Below are positions 5,264-14,401 of a stretch of 64,000 nucleotides of DNA, in pieces. The DNA is taken from positions 182,902-246,901 of the IMG/VR virus record IMGVR_UViG_3300046542_000248; one strand, 5' to 3'. The translations under genes were made by a program, and so were the position numbers. Below the pieces are notes generated by a model. The model saw nothing but the letters and a program-made list of their open reading frames with translations. It was not told the origin of the DNA and ran no database searches. Position 1 is the first letter of the stretch. Each line of letters opens with the position of its first letter.

Positions 5264-7990
5264 TTGTATCGTTTAAAGACCTTCGAAGCTAATAACTTTA
5301 TAGGATTTTATAATGGTCTGAGTAAGAAGAAAATTACTTTAGATCTTAGTCGTTTTAGAGACAAATCTGTTTTTGTTATCATTGGTGCAAATACCAAAGG
5401 AAAGTCAACACTAGCATCTATTCTTCATCCATTCTCTGGCACTACTGATAATCGTGATAAATTTATCAGAGAAGAGAAAGAAGGATATAAGCTATTAGTT
5501 TATGAAGATATGTATGACGAAAGTCGTCAGATAAAAATAAAGCATGTTTATATTCCTAATAAGTCTGGCTCTCATTCTACCAAATCATACATATTTAAGA
5601 TTGAAAATGGTGAGGAGCTGGATTTAAACCCTAATGGTAATGTATCATCATTTCTATTAGCGGTAGATCAAGAGTTCGGTATTGATCAGGATTTCCTGAG
5701 ACTATCCACTCAAAATGAAGATATGGTTGGTTTAGTTAAAATGACTGGAGCCAATCGTAAAGATCATATCTATAAATTTGTACCTAAAGCTGATGACAGT
5801 ACAATTTATCAACGAATTATTACCAAGAAGCATAGGGATGTGGCTTCATTCCTCAAATCAATTATTGACAAACTTGGTAAGATGGACGATGAAGTCACTG
5901 TTAGTGAAAAACTGAAAGAGATTGAGACTGCTACAAATGAACTCGTTGAGAAGCGAGATAAAACTATAGGAAAGATTAACAAGTACCAAGCAGAATTAGA
6001 TCAGATTGATCCTGATGGTAAACTTGAGTCTGACTATAAGGAAATCAAATCTACATTGAAAGATCTTGAGAGAACTCAAGAGAAACTATTATCCAGACTT
6101 GAAGGGATTCGAGAAAGATTTAGTATTGAATCTCTGATGGAATGTGATAAGAAACTGAATGATATCATTGCTACTCGTAATAAAGCATGGGAGCAATTGA
6201 TTGATCTTAGATCACGATTAAACTCGAAGAAGTATCTGAAGTCAACTCTATTAGACCAGATTACTGAAAAGGAATCATTCCTAAATCAGATATCTGGAGA
6301 TTATTCCAAATCAGATCTTGAAAAGTTGATGGATGAATACATTGCGACAGTTAAGAACTTTGACTCCAGAACTAAGAAGCTTAATAGCTCTTTGTCTGCT
6401 GATGATTTAAGACAAGGTATTACTGTCATTGAAAATCTCAGAGAATTTATGGTTGATGTTTATAATAACTGTGACAGTGCATCTATGCTTGAAGAAGCTA
6501 TTGGATACATATTCACAAATAAGCTTGAAGCTAAATATGCTGATACTAAAGAAAAGCATGATAAGATTAGGGAGAAAGTCGAAGGACTAACTTCCAATAT
6601 CACAAAACTATCTGCTTTTGAACACATGAAAAACAGTATAAGTAAACGTCCAAAAGACTGTACTATTGATTCATGTGAGTTCCTACAAGACTATCACAAG
6701 TGGATTCAAATTGATAAGAAGATTAAACAGTTTGAGTCTGATCTTGGTGAAGTTGATTCTGATTATAAAGATTTGATGGATAAAGTAAAGCGATATGCTG
6801 AGATGATCAATGTAAAAGGTAAAGTTGAAAACCTTGTGAATATCTACAAGAGTCAGCATTATCTTATTTCTAAGCTACCGTTCAATGACTCATTCTCTAC
6901 TCAAGAGAAACTTTTAAAGATCCTAGAGAAGTATAACTCAATCGAGAATGTAGAGAATCAATACTACGACTTGATTGAGATTCTTCAGGATAAGGCTGAG
7001 TATGAAGAAATTAAGAATATCAAAATTCCTAAGATTAAGATTGAGCTTGAGAAGTTTGATACTAATAAGAATATGATAGACACTATTAAGAAAGATCTTA
7101 CATCTCTAAATAGCAAGTATGATGAGGTATTTGCAGATATTAAGAAAGAAGATAAAGAGCTAGAAGACCTTGAAGAATTATATGAGGAACTTAACTCTAA
7201 GTCTGAAACTCTTACTGAAGCCAGAGATCAATTTGTTAAGCTTCAAGATGGTAAAGACAGCATCATTAAACTCTCTGATAAGTTTGATTCTATTAAGAAT
7301 AAAACTACTCGGATTGATGAGCTGCATGAGAATCTTGATGAGAAGAAAGATAAACTCAAAAGTATTGATTCTAAACTAAAACCTTTAACTACTGAGAGGG
7401 ACAAGTATAAGTATCAAGAAATCCGAATAAGAGAATATAATCTTGAAAAGGAAGTTCTTGAACAAAACTTTAAGATTATTGGCTTAATCAGAAAAGCACT
7501 ATCTACTGATAAGGGTATGGCTGTAAGTCTATTGAATATGTATGTGGATGAAATCAGAAGAACAGCAAATCTCTTACTTAGTGAGACATTTGATGGTACT
7601 CTACATCTACATCCGTTTAATATTGATGAGAAGGAGTTTGCAATTCCATTTAGTCATAATGGAGAAACTGTAGATGATATCTCTAAAGGTTCCACATCAG
7701 AAAGAGCATTTATGTCAACCTGTCTATCAATGTCACTTATCGAGCAAGTAATTGCTGAGTATGGTATATTGACACTAGATGAAGTTGATGCTGGATTCTC
7801 TGAGCAGAATAAAGCAGTATACTGTAATATTCTGATGAAACAAATCAAACGTATTGGAATCTCTCAGGTCTTCATGATTACTCATGCTAGACAGTACTAT
7901 GAGAACTACAAAGATTCTGTATGCTTCATCCTGTTCCCTGAACATGGTATGGACAAATTTGATTCAAGCAGTATGATTAAAATCGCCTAA
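5264..7990 (+). CDS. sbcC: SbcC/Rad50-like SMC ATPase
   Basis: Walker A GANTKGKST, long coiled coils, central Cys pair CTIDSC, signature SKGSTSE, Walker B LTLDEVD, H-loop MITH. Confidence 0.92.
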   Translation: MYRLKTFEANNFIGFYNGLSKKKITLDLSRFRDKSVFVIIGANTKGKSTLASILHPFSGTTDNRDKFIREEKEGYKLLVYEDMYDESRQIKIKHVYIPNKSGSHSTKSYIFKIENGEELDLNPNGNVSSFLLAVDQEFGIDQDFLRLSTQNEDMVGLVKMTGANRKDHIYKFVPKADDSTIYQRIITKKHRDVASFLKSIIDKLGKMDDEVTVSEKLKEIETATNELVEKRDKTIGKINKYQAELDQIDPDGKLESDYKEIKSTLKDLERTQEKLLSRLEGIRERFSIESLMECDKKLNDIIATRNKAWEQLIDLRSRLNSKKYLKSTLLDQITEKESFLNQISGDYSKSDLEKLMDEYIATVKNFDSRTKKLNSSLSADDLRQGITVIENLREFMVDVYNNCDSASMLEEAIGYIFTNKLEAKYADTKEKHDKIREKVEGLTSNITKLSAFEHMKNSISKRPKDCTIDSCEFLQDYHKWIQIDKKIKQFESDLGEVDSDYKDLMDKVKRYAEMINVKGKVENLVNIYKSQHYLISKLPFNDSFSTQEKLLKILEKYNSIENVENQYYDLIEILQDKAEYEEIKNIKIPKIKIELEKFDTNKNMIDTIKKDLTSLNSKYDEVFADIKKEDKELEDLEELYEELNSKSETLTEARDQFVKLQDGKDSIIKLSDKFDSIKNKTTRIDELHENLDEKKDKLKSIDSKLKPLTTERDKYKYQEIRIREYNLEKEVLEQNFKIIGLIRKALSTDKGMAVSLLNMYVDEIRRTANLLLSETFDGTLHLHPFNIDEKEFAIPFSHNGETVDDISKGSTSERAFMSTCLSMSLIEQVIAEYGILTLDEVDAGFSEQNKAVYCNILMKQIKRIGISQVFMITHARQYYENYKDSVCFILFPEHGMDKFDSSSMIKIA

Positions 7991-8008
7991 CGGTTTAATG
8001 CAATTATC

Positions 8009-8020
8009 AACATTTATATA
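8009..8020 (+). promoter_or_regulatory. putative late promoter AACA-N6-TA
   Basis: AACA tttata TA; matches the AR9 late consensus. Confidence 0.65.
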
Positions 8021-8051
8021 GATTTTAATTAAAAAAGGATGGTGATTCACT

Positions 8052-8525
8052 ATGGGCAGTAATAAAGAAGATCGTCGCAGTCCTTCAACTTCATTTATTC
8101 ACGGTATAAAAGTTCGTAAAAGCGTGGCACAAGCTGCTCCAGTGAGTGGTACTGATGCAATTGTTACATGGGATGTAGAGGATTGGGATAGTGTTGCAGT
8201 TGGTGAATCTAAATACCATAGCATTGTAACTAACACTACCCAACTGATTGCTCCTCGTGAAGGGAAGTATACTCTTAAAGCTTCCTTGGATTATGCAGCA
8301 AACGCAACAGGTCTTCGTTCTGTTGGTTACAAAGTTAATGGCGGAGCAACTCTGCTATTCACTTCTATCACAGCGGCTGCTTCGGACACGGTTGCAGGGT
8401 TTGTTGATATTGCACTTGCTGAGGGTGATTATGTTGAAATCGTGGCAAATCATACAGCAGGCGCTACTTTAGATGTTGAAGCAACTGTGCGTACATTTGC
8501 TACATTGCAATTTAACGGTTACTAA
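8052..8525 (+). CDS. beta-sandwich (C1q/TNF-like) protein, likely virion fibre or decoration
   Basis: all-beta pattern with APREGKYTLKAS and LAEGDYVEI; late promoter. Confidence 0.55.
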   Translation: MGSNKEDRRSPSTSFIHGIKVRKSVAQAAPVSGTDAIVTWDVEDWDSVAVGESKYHSIVTNTTQLIAPREGKYTLKASLDYAANATGLRSVGYKVNGGATLLFTSITAAASDTVAGFVDIALAEGDYVEIVANHTAGATLDVEATVRTFATLQFNGY

Positions 8526-8528
8526 TAA

Positions 8529-8571
8529 AATAACGGTATAGGATTAATTTCCTATACCGTTATTTTTTTTT
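8529..8571 (+). terminator. intrinsic terminator
   Basis: 15-bp stem aataacggtatagga/tcctataccgttatt plus T run. Confidence 0.85.
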
Positions 8572-8599
8572 GTTTAATGCAGATTCATAGAGTAAAGAG

Positions 8600-8609
8600 T
8601 ATATATTAT
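8600..8609 (+). promoter_or_regulatory. putative early promoter TATATATTAT
   Basis: exact motif. Confidence 0.65.
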
Positions 8610-8652
8610 TCTCCTGATATAGTAAGAATAATTAATATTAGGAGGTTTATAT

Positions 8653-9141
8653 ATGGAATATAAAGTTGAGGATTGGATTGTTGGTAAAGAAAAGATTCTA
8701 TTTATTACTGGGTATAGTGGATCAGGTAAATCTACTTTAGCTGATCAAATGGCACGAACTCATAATGCTTATCATATTGAATTGGATATGGTTAATATTA
8801 ATCTTAAGTTAATGTATGGTGAAGATGTTTATCATGGCTGGACACATCCTCAATATTCAGCAGCCGTATTTCATTGGTTAGAATTATGGTTTCTAAATGA
8901 AAGAGTTGTAGTTGAAGGTGGTCAGGTATTAAAGTTAGATTTTAATTGGGTTAGTAAGCATTCTTTTATAATAACTAAAGCTGGGATTATAAAATCTTCG
9001 GTTATGGCAATAATAAGAGATTTTAAGAAAGAGCATTGGGCTAGATATAAATCTATCACACCGTTATATCATATCAAAAAGAATCTAGTTTGGCGTAAGC
9101 GATTAGAAAGATTTATAGTATTAGCGGACACATTCCTTTAA
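8653..9141 (+). CDS. P-loop nucleotide kinase-like protein
   Basis: ILFITGYSGSGKST; VVVEGG; similar to the N-terminal half of 62303..63805. Confidence 0.8.
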   Translation: MEYKVEDWIVGKEKILFITGYSGSGKSTLADQMARTHNAYHIELDMVNINLKLMYGEDVYHGWTHPQYSAAVFHWLELWFLNERVVVEGGQVLKLDFNWVSKHSFIITKAGIIKSSVMAIIRDFKKEHWARYKSITPLYHIKKNLVWRKRLERFIVLADTFL

Positions 9142-9163
9142 CGTAAGTACAAGCCTATATAGG

Positions 9164-9173
9164 TATATATTAT
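9164..9173 (+). promoter_or_regulatory. putative early promoter TATATATTAT
   Basis: exact motif preceded by tataggta, as at 2491. Confidence 0.7.
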
Positions 9174-9218
9174 TATTGTGTAATAACTAATTATATTTGG
9201 GAGAGGAGGTGAGTATCA

Positions 9219-9278
9219 ATGGTTAAAGTAGCTCTATTCGTTATCAAAACCGCAGTAAAAGTATTGGTTAAGAAGTAA
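9219..9278 (+). CDS. 19-aa cationic amphipathic peptide MVKVALFVIKTAVKVLVKK
   Basis: below the ORF-track cutoff; very strong SD gagaggaggtgag; first ORF after an early motif. Confidence 0.65.
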   Translation: MVKVALFVIKTAVKVLVKK

Positions 9279-9355
9279 TCTCGTACATATTTATCTCTGC
9301 TATTATTGGCTTTACTCTACTAAAAATAATTCACTTAGAAAAGGATGATTATCCC

Positions 9356-9568
9356 ATGATGCAAAAATTTATCCAAACTGCTCAAAATCTACAAACTACT
9401 GCTAATACAACACAAGAGGCTGTAAAATGTTTTGCTATGTCCTGTAACATATGCTGTAAACGTGGTATTAAAATGGATTGCGATCGCTGTCCAGTTAAAG
9501 TAAGCCACGAATTGGTTGTTGCAGTATTCGCTGATCTGGAAGAATACGATAGAAACAAGAACTCATAA
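9356..9568 (+). CDS. small Cys-rich protein
   Basis: CFAMSCNICC...CDRC; SD aaaggatg. Confidence 0.7.
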   Translation: MMQKFIQTAQNLQTTANTTQEAVKCFAMSCNICCKRGIKMDCDRCPVKVSHELVVAVFADLEEYDRNKNS

Positions 9569-9644
9569 TATTATTCTATTTTACTGATAACGAACAAATC
9601 GGGAATATGGAGAAATTCTCTATGTTCCCTTTACTAAATATAAG

Positions 9645-10112
9645 GTGGTAACCTACATGACTATTAATCTTATTCCTACTTTTGATCAGGAATCATTGGA
9701 AGAAACTTACGCACAGCTTAAAGAAAATGGATATACAGGTGTAAGATATACACCTGAAGGACATAAAGCTCTATTAATCGAAATTCCTCATATTGTAACA
9801 AAAGCTATCCGTAACTTTATATCTCAAAATGTAACTAAGATGGATGCTATATCTTATATGGAGCATCTTCTGTATAAAGATAAACAAATTCCAAATAAGT
9901 TAGCTTTATCTGCTGATGCTTCTTTCGCTAATTTTCAGTTCATACTCCGCCATGATCGGATTGATCTTAAGATTTATAAAAATCAGCTACAAAAATATCC
10001 AGAAGCATTCAAACTGCTACAATCAGCACATGACATGTATACTATAATTAATATCGCATTTGAACATGCTGAAAAAATTTTAATCACCCTGAGCACACGT
10101 GATGCTCCATAA
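9645..10112 (+). CDS. hypothetical protein
   Basis: 155-aa ORF in a co-directional run. Confidence 0.65.
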   Translation: MVTYMTINLIPTFDQESLEETYAQLKENGYTGVRYTPEGHKALLIEIPHIVTKAIRNFISQNVTKMDAISYMEHLLYKDKQIPNKLALSADASFANFQFILRHDRIDLKIYKNQLQKYPEAFKLLQSAHDMYTIINIAFEHAEKILITLSTRDAP

Positions 10113-10132
10113 CCTATAGGAGAGTGTTAGTT

Positions 10133-10594
10133 ATGCAAATTATTGATGATAAGCTTCAAGGACGTTACGGTAATAAAGGAGTCATCACTACGATTACTCC
10201 TGATAATATAATGCCAATGGCTTTTGACGGTGTACAGCCACAAATAATATTTTCACCACTGTCGATTCTAAATAGAATTGATGACGAAGAGTTAGAAAAT
10301 CTTATTATTGAAAGACTTAAACTAAATCATATTGCTCGTTTGGTTGATGAATTCTATCATCAAGTTAAAGCTCAGTATGGATTAGAAACTGTATTCCTAT
10401 CTGAGAAGAAAGTATCTGCTATGATCGCAATTGAAATGAGTGATAGATTATCTTACGTTTTTGAAAATACATTATACTTAGATGATGAAGTATTATTTGA
10501 TGATATAATGCTTGAACTATTTTCTGAAGGTGTTGAAGATGAAAGAGATATTGTACAAAGTATGATTTCATATATTAATATTAAGAGGAGGTAA
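10133..10594 (+). CDS. protein with an N-terminal RNA polymerase beta-subunit fragment
   Basis: DDKLQGRYGNKGVITTITPDNIMP...DG...IIFSPLSILNR matches the beta GDK..GRHGNKG..MP..DG..NP..R block; the rest is unrelated. Confidence 0.75.
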   Translation: MQIIDDKLQGRYGNKGVITTITPDNIMPMAFDGVQPQIIFSPLSILNRIDDEELENLIIERLKLNHIARLVDEFYHQVKAQYGLETVFLSEKKVSAMIAIEMSDRLSYVFENTLYLDDEVLFDDIMLELFSEGVEDERDIVQSMISYINIKRR

Positions 10595-10601
10595 ACCTAC
10601 T

Positions 10602-10994
10602 ATGCCTACTACTTGGACTAAATTTGATAAGAATAATATCCCTCCATCAGATGTACAATATTTGATCACTGATGGATTCGTTACGGAGATAAGCCGTTGG
10701 CCGTCTGAAGATTGGGGATTGTTTTATGGCGGTATAAGAAAGGTGAAAGATGTTACTCATTATTCAATTATAACATTACCTTGTAAACATCTCATCATTG
10801 AAAACTTAATGGGTGGAGTTGCATGGATTCATTTTGAATGTGAAAGTGAAATTGATGCAAATCTATTCTATAAAGAAATGGCTGCTCATGCACCACATAG
10901 CCGATATCAATTAATGACTATCAGTATTAGTGCATTGGAAGAATGTATTAACACAGGTGTTATGCAATATCTCGAAGATACTATTAAAATGTAA
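10602..10994 (+). CDS. hypothetical protein (DUF551-like N terminus)
   Basis: W...P...YLITDG...VTHY pattern; SD aggaggt. Confidence 0.6.
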   Translation: MPTTWTKFDKNNIPPSDVQYLITDGFVTEISRWPSEDWGLFYGGIRKVKDVTHYSIITLPCKHLIIENLMGGVAWIHFECESEIDANLFYKEMAAHAPHSRYQLMTISISALEECINTGVMQYLEDTIKM

Positions 10995-11019
10995 TCTATT
11001 TATAATGGAGGAATTACAT

Positions 11020-11298
11020 ATGTTAACAATTGCTAAAATGTTTCAATTTGCCACTACTAAAGTTCATCAGCCAATTACTATTATAACTAATGAATTCGTT
11101 TTAGATGAGCACTATGCTCAAGCAATAATTGATCTGGAGAAAAGAACAATTGCGCGTGCTGCTAGATTGACAGTTCTTCTTAAACGCCGCACTTATTTCA
11201 ACTACTTCAATGTACGTAAGCGTTATGGATTAACATTTAAAAACTTTAACTATAAAGTTGATAATGGTCTATGGGCTGAACTTGTAGCTGATAAATAA
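11020..11298 (+). CDS. hypothetical protein
   Basis: start moved to the ATG after ggagg. Confidence 0.65.
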   Translation: MLTIAKMFQFATTKVHQPITIITNEFVLDEHYAQAIIDLEKRTIARAARLTVLLKRRTYFNYFNVRKRYGLTFKNFNYKVDNGLWAELVADK

Positions 11299-11314
11299 GA
11301 AATAAACTGACGAG

Positions 11315-11767
11315 GTGTATGAAATGGAACTAACTGAAAAGCAAAAAGAAGTTTTTGAAAATCTTAGGAAAATATTTATAGATGCTTTTAAGATTGAGCT
11401 TACTGATGATAATTATTTAATTATTACTTATAAAGATGAATCATTTACTACTTCTACTGATATTGCTGGTATAACAACTCTTGTTGAAAAACATAATCAG
11501 CCAATTGAAGGTATAGCTACTGCTTTAGTAGGGTTATTTTCTAAAATGCAGATTGAGAGTCGAGCTAAGAAATTAGTCGGGATTAAGATTAATTTGAATG
11601 ATCCATTAATGATGTCGACTCAAGAAGCTGCTAAAAAATGGAATATCGACGATTCAAATATTCGTCAACGTATCAAATCTTTTCCTCAAGGAAGTATTCG
11701 TAAGTTTGGTAAACAATGGGTTGTCACTGAATATGGTATGCGGTGTGTATTTGGTGAACCAAGATGA
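11315..11767 (+). CDS. C-terminal helix-turn-helix DNA-binding protein
   Basis: MSTQEAAKKWNIDDSNIRQRI...RKFGKQWVVT, an excisionase/MerR-like winged HTH. Confidence 0.75.
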   Translation: MYEMELTEKQKEVFENLRKIFIDAFKIELTDDNYLIITYKDESFTTSTDIAGITTLVEKHNQPIEGIATALVGLFSKMQIESRAKKLVGIKINLNDPLMMSTQEAAKKWNIDDSNIRQRIKSFPQGSIRKFGKQWVVTEYGMRCVFGEPR

Positions 11768-11774
11768 AAGACAA

Positions 11775-11822
11775 AATAACTCACAAAGGATTTGATTTCC
11801 TTTGTGAGTTATTATTTTTTTG
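11775..11822. terminator. bidirectional terminator between convergent genes
   Basis: 16-bp stem aataactcacaaagga/tcctttgtgagttatt. Confidence 0.85.
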
Positions 11823-11823
11823 C

Positions 11824-13062
11824 TTAATATAGATGTGGAACTGAGATAACTTGGAATACCTGATCTGTACGTTTACATTTCATGATATCCTTATCGTCAT
11901 CCCATTTAGGATCAAGGTCTTTCTTCTTAGGAAGAAGTCCTGGATAATCATCTTTAAATCCTCTAAGAATCTTTCCATGATTATCAAGAGCAATTACTTG
12001 CCAGTCATCAGTTTTAAAGGATTTCATGATGGCAACTTTATATTTGCCTTCCATGCTAATAGCAAGTTCATGAGGAGACATATCAATGTCACCGCTCTTA
12101 ATGAGCTTAGTAACTCGTTTCTCGAAACTCTCCTCTTGACCTCTGTCCTTCAGCTTATTTTTTTTATTTTTACCTTTATCTTTCTTACCGTTATCATCAT
12201 CGTCATCTTTAGACTTTCCTTTAGAACTGAAAGCACCAGATGCAAGAAGTTGAGGGAAGAACTTATTCATCATGGCGATGTTTTTAGTTTTCTCATCACC
12301 TTGAGTACCTTTATCTTTAACACGTTTAAGCTCAAGATCAATTCTCGATTTCTGAATATCGGCAATGGATCTTGCACTTGATGCCCTTGCGTTAAACAAG
12401 TTTACTTTAGCAGAGATAAGATCTTTAAGCATAATGTGCTTGCTTCTAGATCTTGATTCTTTAGTCTCTTTAACCATATCATTGATATCGGTAAGAGCTT
12501 CAGACATATCAATTAAGTTCTCCCTAATAAGTGCAAGAGGTTCTTCGAATTTCTTATCGAATTCCTTTTGCTCCTTTTCAAGAGCACGTTTCTCAACGTC
12601 TTCCTCACTGAGTTCAACTTTCTTTGCACCTTTTTCTTTCGATGTGACACCAGAGAATTGTTCACCTTTCTTACCTTTTTTACCACCATGGAACTTATCT
12701 TTATATTCCTTGATAGCACCATGAAGAAGTTTAGCAGATTCAGGCATCTTACTAAGTTTTTTCTTTTCTTTCTTACGCTTCTTCTTTTCCTCTTTAAGCT
12801 TTTTCTTTTCTTTCTTGGATAAACCCTTCTCCTCGATTTCTTCGAGTGCAGAATGTTTCTTACGAAGAGATTCTAATTCCTTTCTCTTCTCCTCGATCTT
12901 GTCTTCCATATTTTTATTAAGCATGGAAGCGCCCCAAGCAGATAATGAAACTTTGATATAGCCATTACCAGAACGTTTGTCTTCATGAAAATCCTTCTTC
13001 AGTCCCTGTTCTTCCATTTCATCATCAGAGATATTGATTCTAGAAACTTTAGCTCTTGGCAT
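11824..13062 (-). CDS. Lys/Glu-rich coiled-coil hypothetical protein (late)
   Basis: 412 aa, low complexity; AACA-N6-TA upstream. Confidence 0.8.
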   Translation of the reverse strand: MPRAKVSRINISDDEMEEQGLKKDFHEDKRSGNGYIKVSLSAWGASMLNKNMEDKIEEKRKELESLRKKHSALEEIEEKGLSKKEKKKLKEEKKKRKKEKKKLSKMPESAKLLHGAIKEYKDKFHGGKKGKKGEQFSGVTSKEKGAKKVELSEEDVEKRALEKEQKEFDKKFEEPLALIRENLIDMSEALTDINDMVKETKESRSRSKHIMLKDLISAKVNLFNARASSARSIADIQKSRIDLELKRVKDKGTQGDEKTKNIAMMNKFFPQLLASGAFSSKGKSKDDDDDNGKKDKGKNKKNKLKDRGQEESFEKRVTKLIKSGDIDMSPHELAISMEGKYKVAIMKSFKTDDWQVIALDNHGKILRGFKDDYPGLLPKKKDLDPKWDDDKDIMKCKRTDQVFQVISVPHLY

Positions 13063-13100
13063 ATAACTCAGTCCTTCCTGTCTATTAATGAATAATAAGT

Positions 13101-13112
13101 TATTACGATGTT
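13101..13112 (-). promoter_or_regulatory. putative late promoter AACA-N6-TA
   Basis: minus strand AACA tcgtaa TA. Confidence 0.65.
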
Positions 13113-13168
13113 TTTAATGTAAAAATGTAATATGGAATGCAGGAAGCCCCACATTCCATATCTTATAA

Positions 13169-14401
13169 TTAAAGTTTTTCTAGAGTGTCCAGAGTGTTAT
13201 TCACACTTCTTAGGAATACTCCGTTCAAGCTAATGAAGTAAGCAATGAAATCATTGATTTCTTTTGTAATAACCGAAAGTGCTCTATAGGATTTTCTATC
13301 CATCATACCAGCTTCAACAACAGCTTTTTCAGAATCTTTCAACCCGTTCAAAGCATCATTGGATAAACCATCCAATAGTTGTCTATTCTTCTCAACAACG
13401 TCTGTCAGATGTTTTAAACCATTAAGAATTTCTTGAGTGGTGAGTTCTTGTGAACCATTTAAGCGTTTCCATTTATCACCATCTTCTTCTTTTTCAAATG
13501 TAGCTAAAGAACCAACTACACCTGATAGCTTTTTACCAATATCATCTTTCCGATTTTCCCCAGAAATAAATTGTTCAAGAGCGAATTTTACATTCTCATT
13601 GAAGTCCTCATCACTTTTATCAAGTTTATTAAGTCCTTCAATTCCGTCGAATGCATCTTGTTTACGAACTACGTTGTGTAGAACTTTATCTTGAATAGTT
13701 TTCACTTTATTGATATATACTTCCATCGTTTCCATCTTTGCAAATGTTAACGGTATTCTAATAGTTCTAGCTTGTTGCTTTGTAAACTTAGCATCGTCTT
13801 CTTCTCTTTTCTTACGTTTTGCTTCAGCCGCAGCCTCTTTCTTTTCTTTCTCAAGTTGAGCCAGCTTTTCTTGTTCTTCTTTTAACTGCTTTAGCTTTGC
13901 TTCGTATTCTGCATTTTCTTTATCTTTTAATTCTTTCATTTGATCTTTTAATTTATCCAGATTGGCTGCAACAGCATCAGTCATTGCAGTAAGTTTTTTC
14001 TCGGTTTGTGCATGAATTTCATCAGCTTTAACACCTTTAAATTCCGACTTCTTCATTCCTTCAGGTTGAGCCAACTTCTTTTCCACATCTTGTATTCTAA
14101 CTTTAGTATCTTTTACATTTTTGGAAAACTTGGATCGGATAAAGTTAACGAAGAGTCTAATTTTATCTCCAATCCATTTAAAGAATTTCTTAATGCCTTC
14201 GATAAACTTATTATCATCCGATTCTGTCAAATAAGTGCCAGACCAAGCTTCGAATAAGATATTATCGGTTGTAGTTGATTCATACATCAATGACTCTAGA
14301 GTCACAGGCTCAGGCATAACAAGTTCTGGGACATTTCCAGAACTAATTTCACCCATATTATATCCTTCCATAATGTAACGCAGTTTTGTTGAAATTTCCA
14401 T
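13169..14401 (-). CDS. internal head protein, KLxLIxEG family
   Basis: MEISTKLRYIMEG; repeated ES/EA sites; amphipathic FFKWIGDKIRLFVNFIRSKF. Confidence 0.7.
   Translation of the reverse strand: MEISTKLRYIMEGYNMGEISSGNVPELVMPEPVTLESLMYESTTTDNILFEAWSGTYLTESDDNKFIEGIKKFFKWIGDKIRLFVNFIRSKFSKNVKDTKVRIQDVEKKLAQPEGMKKSEFKGVKADEIHAQTEKKLTAMTDAVAANLDKLKDQMKELKDKENAEYEAKLKQLKEEQEKLAQLEKEKKEAAAEAKRKKREEDDAKFTKQQARTIRIPLTFAKMETMEVYINKVKTIQDKVLHNVVRKQDAFDGIEGLNKLDKSDEDFNENVKFALEQFISGENRKDDIGKKLSGVVGSLATFEKEEDGDKWKRLNGSQELTTQEILNGLKHLTDVVEKNRQLLDGLSNDALNGLKDSEKAVVEAGMMDRKSYRALSVITKEINDFIAYFISLNGVFLRSVNNTLDTLEKL

What the first reader, a model, noticed from the sequence alone, without database searches (positions are those of the whole stretch)
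10133..10594. Isolated RNA polymerase beta active-site-region fragment fused to an unrelated helical domain
About 48 residues reproduce the beta block GDK-x2-GR(H/Y)GNKG-x9-MP-x3-DG-x4-I-x2-P-x5-R, including both NTP-contacting lysines. The sequence then switches to an unrelated acidic region. It is far too short for a subunit and lies among accessory genes. It could be a recombination relic or a mimic that poisons or decoys RNAP assembly or host defence sensors.
Basis: partly seen in the sequence, partly recalled or inferred. Interest (0 to 1): 0.62.

Follow-up and report, generated by a model that had tools for sequence, protein, structure and literature searches.

The report
Polymerase active-site fragment in phage gene
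A small early gene of an uncultured soil jumbo phage begins with a captured 70-residue piece of the phage-type RNA polymerase beta subunit, catalytic loop included, joined to a separate conserved domain; it is a curiosity of gene birth and not a polymerase subunit.

Summary
ORF 10133-10594 (153 aa) matches Pfam RNA_pol_Rpb2_6 above the curated cut-off, and K7, R11 and K15 align to E. coli beta K1065, R1069 and K1073. The genome is a 247-kb AR9/PBS1-like jumbo phage from rhizosphere metagenomes. It has its own intact non-virion beta-C gene and a virion beta-like gene, so this is a third, ectopic copy of the block. It is not a recent copy: 45% aa and 55% nt identity to its own beta-C, synonymous sites saturated, a long branch outside its own clade. 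Residues 73-153 are a separate domain with two metagenomic orthologs at the same locus. One is complete and has lost the beta motif through deletions. The shared C-terminal end shows dN/dS about 0.2. Four other relatives lack the gene. In related Bacillus and Staphylococcus jumbo phages, introns or gene splits cluster at five sites in or beside this block, and one split ORF starts almost where this one does. That suggests capture of a broken beta-C piece. Best reading: a lineage-restricted early accessory gene built on an exapted beta fragment. A mimic or decoy role is neither supported nor excluded.

The parts
8600..8616 (+). AR9-type early (virion RNAP) promoter-like motif TATATATTAT-(6N)-G at the head of the transcription unit
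   Evidence: Exact match. The AR9 early consensus AAATATATATTAT-(6N)-G comes from PMC5312081. A terminator-like hairpin at 8527-8566 lies just upstream.
9164..9180 (+). Second AR9-type early promoter-like motif inside the unit
   Evidence: Exact match.
9601..9629 (+). Conserved 13-bp RNA hairpin after the 70-aa Cys-rich gene
   Evidence: dG -19.8 kcal/mol, z -4.1. Nearly the same sequence follows the ortholog of that gene in L012 6117-6147.
9657..10112 (+). ORFan directly upstream of the finding, absent at this place in the relative L012 (an indel next to the fragment gene's RBS)
   Evidence: No tblastn match in L012 or the other relatives or in the phage collection. Weak HPF/YfiA-like hits only.
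10118..10122 (+). Shine-Dalgarno AGGAG, 10 nt before the ATG
   Evidence: Read from the sequence.
10133..10594 (+). The gene: 153-aa protein P0001 (stop included)
   Evidence: The ortholog P0002 starts at the equivalent ATG (M)MQI.
10139..10348 (+). Segment homologous to nvRNAP beta-C (residues about 3-72, corresponding to own beta-C 370-433 and AR9 gp089 364-429)
   Evidence: BLASTP to own beta-C: 25/55 identical, E 1e-12. HMM of six beta-C proteins: 46 bits, residues 6-80. hhalign probability 97.4%. PDB 7S00_C.
10145..10294 (+). Pfam RNA_pol_Rpb2_6 match (residues 5-54)
   Evidence: 34.8 bits against cut-off 23.4. The genome-wide scan lists it as one of three matches.
10151..10177 (+). Catalytic-loop codons K7, R11, Y12, K15, G16 (equivalent to E. 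coli beta K1065, R1069, H1070, K1073, G1074)
   Evidence: Alignment to E. coli beta 1064-1108. These columns are invariant in the beta-C family.
10349..10591 (+). C-terminal acidic domain (residues 73-153) shared with P0002 and L025; no significant similarity to beta
   Evidence: 46% identity to P0002, the only other cluster among 1.84 billion representatives. L025 is a third, truncated member. dN/dS 0.21 for L012 against L025 over 40 codons. No Pfam family.
10602..10994 (+). Downstream gene 7 nt after the stop. Its C-terminal half has an ortholog next to P0002 in L012. Together with the fragment gene it forms the cassette missing from other relatives.
11775..11813 (.). Bidirectional terminator-like hairpin closing the unit after the HTH_59 gene

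Best explanation
The ORF is a real, lineage-restricted accessory gene, probably early, of an AR9/PBS1-like jumbo phage. Its first roughly 70 codons derive from an internal piece of a phage-type non-virion RNA polymerase beta-C gene: the catalytic Lys/Arg loop, the following strands of the active-site barrel, and the next helix. This piece sits in front of an unrelated conserved domain of about 80 residues. The protein cannot be a polymerase subunit or a catalyst, because it has about 70 of the roughly 690 beta-C residues and no partner-binding domains. The part shown to be under selection is the C-terminal domain, which I take to be the working part. The beta piece is an exapted N-terminal extension that one sister lineage has already lost. 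Inferred origin: illegitimate capture of a beta-C piece that was already broken at this spot. In related phages the block is a hot spot for group I introns and gene splits, and one natural split ORF starts within two residues of this one. Shown: the homology and its limits, the orthologs, the loss in the ortholog, the absence from other relatives, and that it is not a recent copy. Inferred: expression timing, the capture route, and the role of the C-terminal domain.
For: Identity and limits of the beta piece. The genome has an intact beta-C (692 aa, with its own motif) and a vRNAP beta-like gene; there is no similarity to the latter. Not a recent copy: 45% aa and 55% nt identity, third codon positions 25/55; 40-57% identity to every beta-C found; a mosaic of clade-specific residues; a long branch outside its own clade, which is monophyletic at 98/95. 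Orthologs: P0002 at the syntenic locus in L012, where flanking SbcC-like, 412-aa and PolB genes are 76-81% identical, and L025. Selection on the C-terminal end: dN/dS 0.21, against 0.25 and 0.11 for the neighbours. The block is lost in P0002: no Pfam or beta-C HMM hit. Its N-terminus is still collinear with ours, with 6 of 5000 shuffles scoring as high. The gene is absent from L019/L020, L021, L022 and L023, where the flanking small genes abut. Hot spot: twin group I introns in BpSp (83 and 82 bits) flank a 32-aa mini-exon equal to this block. Internexus has an insertion at RLN^PS. Madawaska and MarsHill have exon joints at GS^K and RYG^GKG. The third PB50 ORF starts MKFINTNAKISTRYGGKG. Early-type promoter motifs and a terminator bracket the unit.
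Against: If P0002's N-terminus really shares ancestry with the block, capture predates a split deep enough to saturate silent sites. L012 and L025 already have dS of about 0.4 at 95% identity of the flanking 412-aa gene product. A neutral block should then be unrecognisable, yet 17 of 26 family-conserved columns, including K7, R11 and K15, are kept against 8 of 45 variable ones. This points to continuing constraint on the block in this phage, or to a later re-acquisition, so 'mere extension' may understate it. No intron or homing-endonuclease remnant flanks the gene, so the capture route is conjecture. There is no expression evidence: only DNA metagenome runs hold the sequence. The dN/dS rests on 40 codons of the sister lineage, not on this gene.
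Confidence: 0.55

Rival explanations
1. RNA polymerase mimic or decoy. The retained half of the beta active-site barrel still docks onto its natural partner (the beta-prime catalytic barrel of the phage nvRNAP, or host RNAP) or onto a factor that recognises beta, such as a defence sensor or a homing endonuclease. The protein would then modulate polymerase assembly or activity, or divert that factor.
For: Family-conserved residues, including the non-structural K7, R11 and K15, are kept preferentially: 17 of 26 conserved columns against 8 of 45 variable ones. Silent sites between the two gene lineages should be saturated, which argues for constraint on the block in this phage. The early-type promoter motifs would place it with the early genes, the class expected to include the nvRNAP subunit genes (PMC5312081; the class of those genes is my inference).
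Against: Only about 70 residues from the interior of a 690-residue subunit are present. The block is predicted disordered on its own (pLDDT about 30). The one complete ortholog has lost the motif yet keeps the gene. The gene is absent from four close relatives. The block sits on a long branch of 3.1 changes per site against a median of 0.11. No binding evidence exists; the homodimer prediction gave no answer.
Confidence: 0.17
2. Neutral relic. The beta block is filler DNA from a recombination or repair accident that happens to lie in frame at the head of a functional small gene. It has no role and is simply less decayed here than in the sister lineage, for example because it was acquired or replaced after the two lineages split.
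For: The block is lost in P0002. It sits on a long branch, has no fold of its own, and is a lone occurrence among 5.8 and 1.84 billion proteins searched. There is an indel (ORF 9657-10112) immediately upstream of the gene relative to L012.
Against: The shared start MQI.D and the collinear remnants KG..P..ILN.ID..K.N in P0002 (6 of 5000 shuffles) argue that the block was already there before the split. A neutral block of that age should have been erased. Identities concentrate on family-conserved columns.
Confidence: 0.2
3. Exon or piece of a split beta gene. The ORF supplies the active-site block to a polymerase whose main beta gene lacks it, by splicing or as a separate subunit, as in intron-split beta-C genes of related phages.
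For: Related phages do carry beta-C in pieces broken exactly here.
Against: This phage's own beta-C is one uninterrupted 692-aa ORF with its own complete block. Rfam finds no group I intron beside the gene or above threshold anywhere in the genome; the best hit is 13.5 bits against a threshold of 50. The sequence after residue 72 is not beta. The virion beta-like gene has its own, divergent, motif region.
Confidence: 0.03

Closest known systems
Non-virion RNA polymerase beta-C subunit of AR9-like jumbo phages (AR9 gp089, PDB 7S00 chain C; this phage's own copy at genome 143.5 kb)
   Same: Residues 6-72 align to gp089 364-429 (E 7e-7), with the K-x3-R-Y-G-N-K-G loop, MP, DG and the following E-L-N-x-I helix. 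GRYGNKG with Tyr is the form found in AR9, phiR1-37 and LPJP1 (the Staphylococcus phages have RYGGKG); IIFS.LS is the form found in this phage's own clade.
   Different: 153 residues against 665-692. Everything before the block and after the helix is missing. 40-57% identity to all known members, on a long branch outside its own clade. Ectopic position 50 kb from the real gene.
Exon ORFs of intron-split or fragmented beta-C genes in Staphylococcus and Bacillus jumbo phages (PB50, Madawaska, MarsHill, vB_BpuM-BpSp, Internexus)
   Same: These are short ORFs that start at or within a few codons of the same catalytic block. PB50's piece 3 starts 8 residues before the first Lys; this ORF starts 6 before. 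The BpSp mini-exon is essentially this block.
   Different: Those pieces lie within the beta-C locus, are collinear with the rest of the gene and, in BpSp, are flanked by recognisable group I introns. This one is ectopic, has no intron flanks, continues into non-beta sequence, and coexists with an intact beta-C.
Small phage-encoded RNA polymerase-binding regulators (e.g. T7 Gp2, T4 AsiA, Xp10 P7; recalled from general knowledge, not tested here)
   Same: Small acidic early phage proteins; only the 'works like' analogy for the mimic reading.
   Different: None of them is derived from a polymerase subunit fragment. No sequence or structural similarity was found or tested, and no binding evidence exists here.

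Membership tests
Pfam PF00562 RNA_pol_Rpb2_6 (beta/Rpb2 domain 6) | Score above the curated gathering threshold | tested here: met
   34.8 bits against 23.4. Also over the cut-off in the genome scan.
Pfam PF00562 RNA_pol_Rpb2_6 (beta/Rpb2 domain 6) | Presence of the whole domain (373 profile positions) | tested here: not met
   Only profile positions 224-273 are matched. The beta-C family HMM covers 367-441 of 661.
Functional RNAP beta (or beta-C) subunit | Catalytic-loop residues K1065, R1069 and K1073 (E. coli numbering) | tested here: met
   K7, R11 and K15 align to them. These columns are invariant in beta-C.
Functional RNAP beta (or beta-C) subunit | Remaining beta modules: the sequence before the block, and the C-terminal conserved blocks (HEP.GK.S.RS, clamp/anchor region) | tested here: not met
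   153 aa. No other Rpb2 domain. Residues 73-153 give no significant match to the post-motif beta-C profile, p 0.34-0.40 by shuffles.
Exon of an intron-split beta-C gene | Flanking self-splicing intron and/or a main gene that lacks the block | tested here: not met
   No Rfam group I intron in window 8594-11788 or above threshold in the genome. The phage's own beta-C is intact.
Conserved orthologous accessory gene family (P0001/P0002/L025) | Syntenic orthologs with an open frame and purifying selection | tested here: met
   P0002 lies in the same gene order between the SbcC-like gene and PolB. L025 is a third member. dN/dS 0.21 over 40 codons.
Conserved orthologous accessory gene family (P0001/P0002/L025) | Beta block conserved across members | tested here: not met
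   P0002 has no Pfam or beta-C HMM match. Two deletions remove the GRYG segment and the DG...PLS segment. The N-terminus of L025 is cut off by the contig end.
RNAP-binding mimic/decoy | Physical binding to an RNAP subunit or to a sensor | not testable with these tools
   Only a homodimer prediction was run, and it gave no answer. No partner was tested.

The most novel reading that the evidence does not exclude
The half-barrel carrying the two catalytic lysines and the arginine is kept by selection in this phage as a working module. It would be a free-standing mimic of the beta active-site surface that docks on the beta-prime catalytic barrel of the phage's (or a competitor's or the host's) polymerase, or that titrates a factor aimed at this most conserved stretch of beta. 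That factor could be a homing endonuclease or a defence sensor in the intron-driven conflicts documented for jumbo-phage RNAP genes. The acidic C-terminal domain would act as effector or anchor. A further unproven twist: the C-terminal domain may itself descend from the beta-C segment just upstream of the block (circular permutation by tandem duplication). Every profile method hit that same segment, but only at p of about 0.01-0.07.
Probability: 0.15. Interest if true: 0.75.

Novelty: new variant of a known kind. Interest (0 to 1): 0.36.

Why it matters
This is a clean, datable example of how a jumbo phage makes a new small gene from a piece of an essential core gene. It also ties that event to a feature of this phage group that has had little attention: the catalytic loop of the non-virion RNAP beta subunit is a hot spot for mobile introns and gene splits, with five sites within about 55 codons across Bacillus and Staphylococcus phages. 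If the block proves to be maintained by selection, it would be the first free-standing active-site fragment of a multisubunit RNAP with a role of its own. It would also give a handle on polymerase assembly, or on intron and homing-endonuclease conflict between co-infecting jumbo phages. If not, it is an ordinary recombination by-product and should be annotated as 'hypothetical protein with an RpoB-derived N-terminal segment', never as an RNAP subunit.

Tried and rejected
1. Recent copy of the phage's own beta genes: rejected (45% aa and 55% nt identity, third positions saturated; no similarity to the vRNAP beta-like protein; outside its own clade in the tree).

2. Homology extending upstream of the ATG across a TGA (the Pfam-based genome scan reported 10094-10288): not reproduced by the closer beta-C family HMM, which starts at residue 5. 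That stretch lies inside ORF 9657-10112, which L012 lacks. I treat it as unsupported.

3. C-terminal domain as a collinear continuation of beta-C (post-motif helical insert). A tblastn alignment to PB50 looked collinear, but the post-motif profile gives p 0.34-0.40. Rejected as unproven.

4. C-terminal domain as the permuted pre-motif beta-C segment (about 289-374). It recurred in hmmsearch, hhalign and phmmer, but only at p of about 0.01-0.07, partly chosen after the fact. The predicted secondary structure does not obviously agree. Kept only as a lead.

5. AlphaFold2 on the two-sequence alignment: mean pLDDT 41, unusable, so no fold search was run.

6. Homodimer prediction (half-barrel dimer idea): 'no answer'. 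This is neither evidence for nor against.

7. ESM Atlas. The part query gave two short Rpb2_6-bearing clusters at 0.85 and 0.83, below the 0.9 lead level, and it still contained the beta-like helix. P0002 gave nothing usable.

8. Searches that found no further members: phage collection by DNA and protein, IMG/VR, word-indexed protein search. A neighbour-gene scan of IMG/VR was also blank.

9. Population variation and expression. Four rhizosphere DNA runs were found, one of them the likely source. There were no variants and no RNA runs (5001 letters laid, within the operators' limit).

10. Group I intron remnants near the gene or in the genome: none.

11. Sigma-70 promoter scan: no enrichment.

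No alternative genetic code was used.

Full report
**The observation**

The ORF at window 10133-10594 (+) has an ATG 10 nt after an AGGAG and encodes 153 residues.
- Residues 5-54 match Pfam RNA_pol_Rpb2_6 at 34.8 bits (cut-off 23.4; E 1.3e-8), profile positions 224-273 of 373.
- PHROGs and NCBIfam rpoB models agree.
- Against solved structures, the best hit is the beta-C subunit of the Bacillus phage AR9 non-virion RNA polymerase (7S00 chain C, residues 364-429, E 7e-7).
- E. coli beta 1064-1108 aligns to residues 6-50, so K7, R11, Y12 and K15 stand for K1065, R1069, H1070 and K1073.

The block, both lysines, the short length and the acidic remainder are as described. Only the first Gly of 'GDK' differs: it is Asp here.

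**The genome**

The window is the last 64 kb of a 246.9-kb viral record rated complete by CheckV.
- It has three Rpb2_6 matches. One is an uninterrupted 692-aa beta-C gene with its own block (VIGTKLVGRHGNKGVISE...). One is a 1396-aa open frame with a very divergent motif, the virion-polymerase beta-like gene. The third is this ORF.
- The closest named relatives of the beta-C gene are AR9/PBS1 (Takahashivirus, 34% identity), the Staphylococcus jumbo phages S6, SA1 and PB50, and Yersinia phiR1-37.
- A metagenomic clade of about 16 closer beta-C proteins exists (53-84% identity).
- The DNA is found in four rhizosphere metagenome runs. No variants and no RNA runs were found.

**Not a recent copy**

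- Against the phage's own beta-C, the block is 25/55 identical in protein and 55% in DNA. Third codon positions match at 25/55, which is saturated.
- There is no similarity to the virion beta-like protein.
- It is 40-57% identical to every phage beta-C recovered and 37-42% to cellular RpoB.
- Column by column it is a mosaic. It has Tyr in GRYGNKG and Asn-Arg, as in the AR9 group, but IIFS.LS and no four-residue insert, as in its own clade.
- In a maximum-likelihood tree of the block, its own clade is monophyletic without it (98/95). The fragment sits on a branch of 3.1 changes per site against a median of 0.11. Its exact position is unresolved.

**How far the beta homology goes**

A profile of six beta-C proteins aligns residues 6-80 (46 bits). 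Good posterior support runs through IErLKLNHIARLV, after a 4-5 residue insertion. hhalign (97.4%) and phmmer against AR9 gp089 give the same end near residue 72.

Residues 73-153 show no significant similarity to the collinear post-motif part of beta-C (p 0.34-0.40 by shuffling). Every method instead gave a weak hit to the segment just upstream of the block (own beta-C about 289-374, e.g. LYLDDEVLFDDIMLELF against KWDDDGSIFDNMIMYF), at p of about 0.01-0.07. I keep this only as a lead. If real, it would imply a circular permutation through a tandem duplication.

**Orthologs**

An exhaustive HMMER scan of 1.84 billion representatives with residues 49-153 found one other cluster: P0002, 124 aa, 46% identical.
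- P0002 lies on a 30-kb JGI contig (L012) in the same gene order. The order is SbcC-like 908 aa (77% identical), the 70-aa Cys-rich gene (61%), P0002, a short ortholog of the downstream gene, the 92-aa gene (53%), the HTH_59 gene, the 412-aa gene on the other strand (76%), and DNA polymerase B (81%).
- A third member (L025) is cut by the contig end. Its last 40 codons are 82.5% identical to P0002, with 7.5 synonymous and 7.5 non-synonymous differences. That gives dN/dS 0.21, like the neighbouring genes at 0.25 and 0.11.
- The C-terminal domain is therefore a real, selected coding sequence.

P0002's N-terminus is 29 residues shorter and has no Pfam or beta-C profile match. It is still collinear with ours (MQI.D, KG, P, ILN.ID, K.N; 6 of 5000 shuffles score as high). 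This suggests the block was ancestral and was broken there by two deletions.

Four further relatives (PolB 54-76% identical) lack the gene. In L019/L020 and L021 the orthologs of the 70-aa and 92-aa genes abut; L022 and L023 carry other small ORFs at this place. In this phage an extra ORFan (9657-10112) sits directly upstream of the gene's ribosome-binding site.

**Selection on the block**

This evidence pulls two ways.
- For relaxed constraint: the long branch, the loss in P0002, the absence from relatives, and a block that AlphaFold2 leaves unfolded (pLDDT about 30; whole model 41, so no fold search was justified).
- For continued constraint: 17 of 26 family-conserved columns are kept against 8 of 45 variable ones, including K7, R11 and K15. 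If the capture predates the split from L012, silent sites have long been saturated. L012 and L025, whose flanking 412-aa gene products are 95% identical, already show dS of about 0.4. A neutral block should then have vanished.

Either the block is still constrained in this phage, or it was renewed after the split.

**Context in relatives: a hot spot for interruptions**

- In Bacillus phage BpSp the beta-C gene carries two group I introns (Rfam 83 and 82 bits). They are placed after GR and after PLG and enclose a 32-residue mini-exon that is essentially this block.
- Internexus has a 1.3-kb insertion with an ORF at RLN^PS.
- Madawaska and MarsHill are annotated with exon joints that map to GS^K and RYG^GKG.
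- PB50 is annotated as four ORFs, the third beginning MKFINTNAKISTRYGGKG.
- That makes five interruption sites within about 55 codons, and a natural ORF that starts within two residues of ours.

Homing endonucleases in jumbo-phage RNAP genes are known to act in competition between co-infecting phages (review PMC12908238). This makes capture of a broken or excised beta-C piece a plausible origin. However, no intron or endonuclease remnant flanks the gene, and the genome has no group I intron above threshold. The route is therefore inference.

**Expression context**

The gene lies in a same-strand unit, 8653-11767.
- The unit is preceded by a terminator-like hairpin and closed by a bidirectional one.
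- Exact copies of TATATATTAT-(6N)-G lie at 8600 and 9164. This matches the AR9 early, virion-polymerase promoter consensus (PMC5312081).
- I therefore expect early expression, by analogy only.

**Verdict**

- Best reading (0.55): a lineage-restricted early accessory gene born on a captured beta-C fragment. The C-terminal domain is the working part and the beta piece is an exapted extension.
- Rivals: neutral relic in frame (0.20); functional polymerase mimic or decoy (0.17); exon of a split beta gene (0.03, contradicted). The remainder is left open.
- It belongs to the Rpb2_6 family only at the level of a partial domain match and must not be annotated as an RNAP subunit.

A homodimer prediction gave no answer and is not evidence either way.

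Noticed in passing
window 2491, 3395, 4039, 8600, 9164, 14466, 32578 (+ strand): Exact copies of TATATATTAT-(6N)-G in intergenic positions. This is the core of the AR9 early (virion RNAP) promoter consensus, so this distant relative (beta-C 34% identical) seems to keep the same early promoter.
   Followed up: partly
window 9601-9629; L012 6117-6147: A 13-bp RNA hairpin with two G-U pairs (dG -19.8, z -4.1) after the 70-aa Cys-rich gene, conserved almost base for base in the relative. In L012 it is followed by a T-run, like a terminator or attenuator.
   Followed up: partly
window 9657-10112: ORFan unique to this phage. It gives weak hits to ribosome hibernation factor HPF/YfiA (Ribosomal_S30AE) in two independent libraries (Pfam E 0.096, NCBIfam TIGR00741 E 0.099), both far below their cut-offs.
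   Followed up: no
L004 (Bacillus phage vB_BpuM-BpSp) 5066-6702: The nvRNAP beta-C gene is annotated as a truncated CDS plus 'hypothetical proteins'. It in fact contains two group I introns (the first with an ORF of 229 aa) around a 32-aa mini-exon that encodes the catalytic loop.
   Followed up: partly
L006 (Staphylococcus phage PB50) 1441-4103; L026, L027: Beta-C in four ORFs separated by gaps of only 150-190 nt with no Rfam intron match. In the sister phages Madawaska and MarsHill the same gene is annotated as joined exons, one exon being only about 7 codons. The nature of these short intervening sequences is unclear.
   Followed up: partly
window 9356-9568: 70-aa protein with CxxC...CxxC spacing (probably zinc-binding). 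It is conserved in five of the six relatives' loci examined; the exception is L022.
   Followed up: no
window 5264-14401 compared with L012, L019-L023: The stretch between the SbcC-like gene and the 412-aa gene upstream of DNA polymerase B is a hypervariable island. Each relative carries a different set of small ORFs there, while the flanks stay 54-81% identical.
   Followed up: partly
window 8653-9141 against L012 5340-5828: Both phages have a 162-aa ORF at the same position, but tblastn finds no similarity between them. The window's copy is a P-loop kinase-like protein.
   Followed up: no
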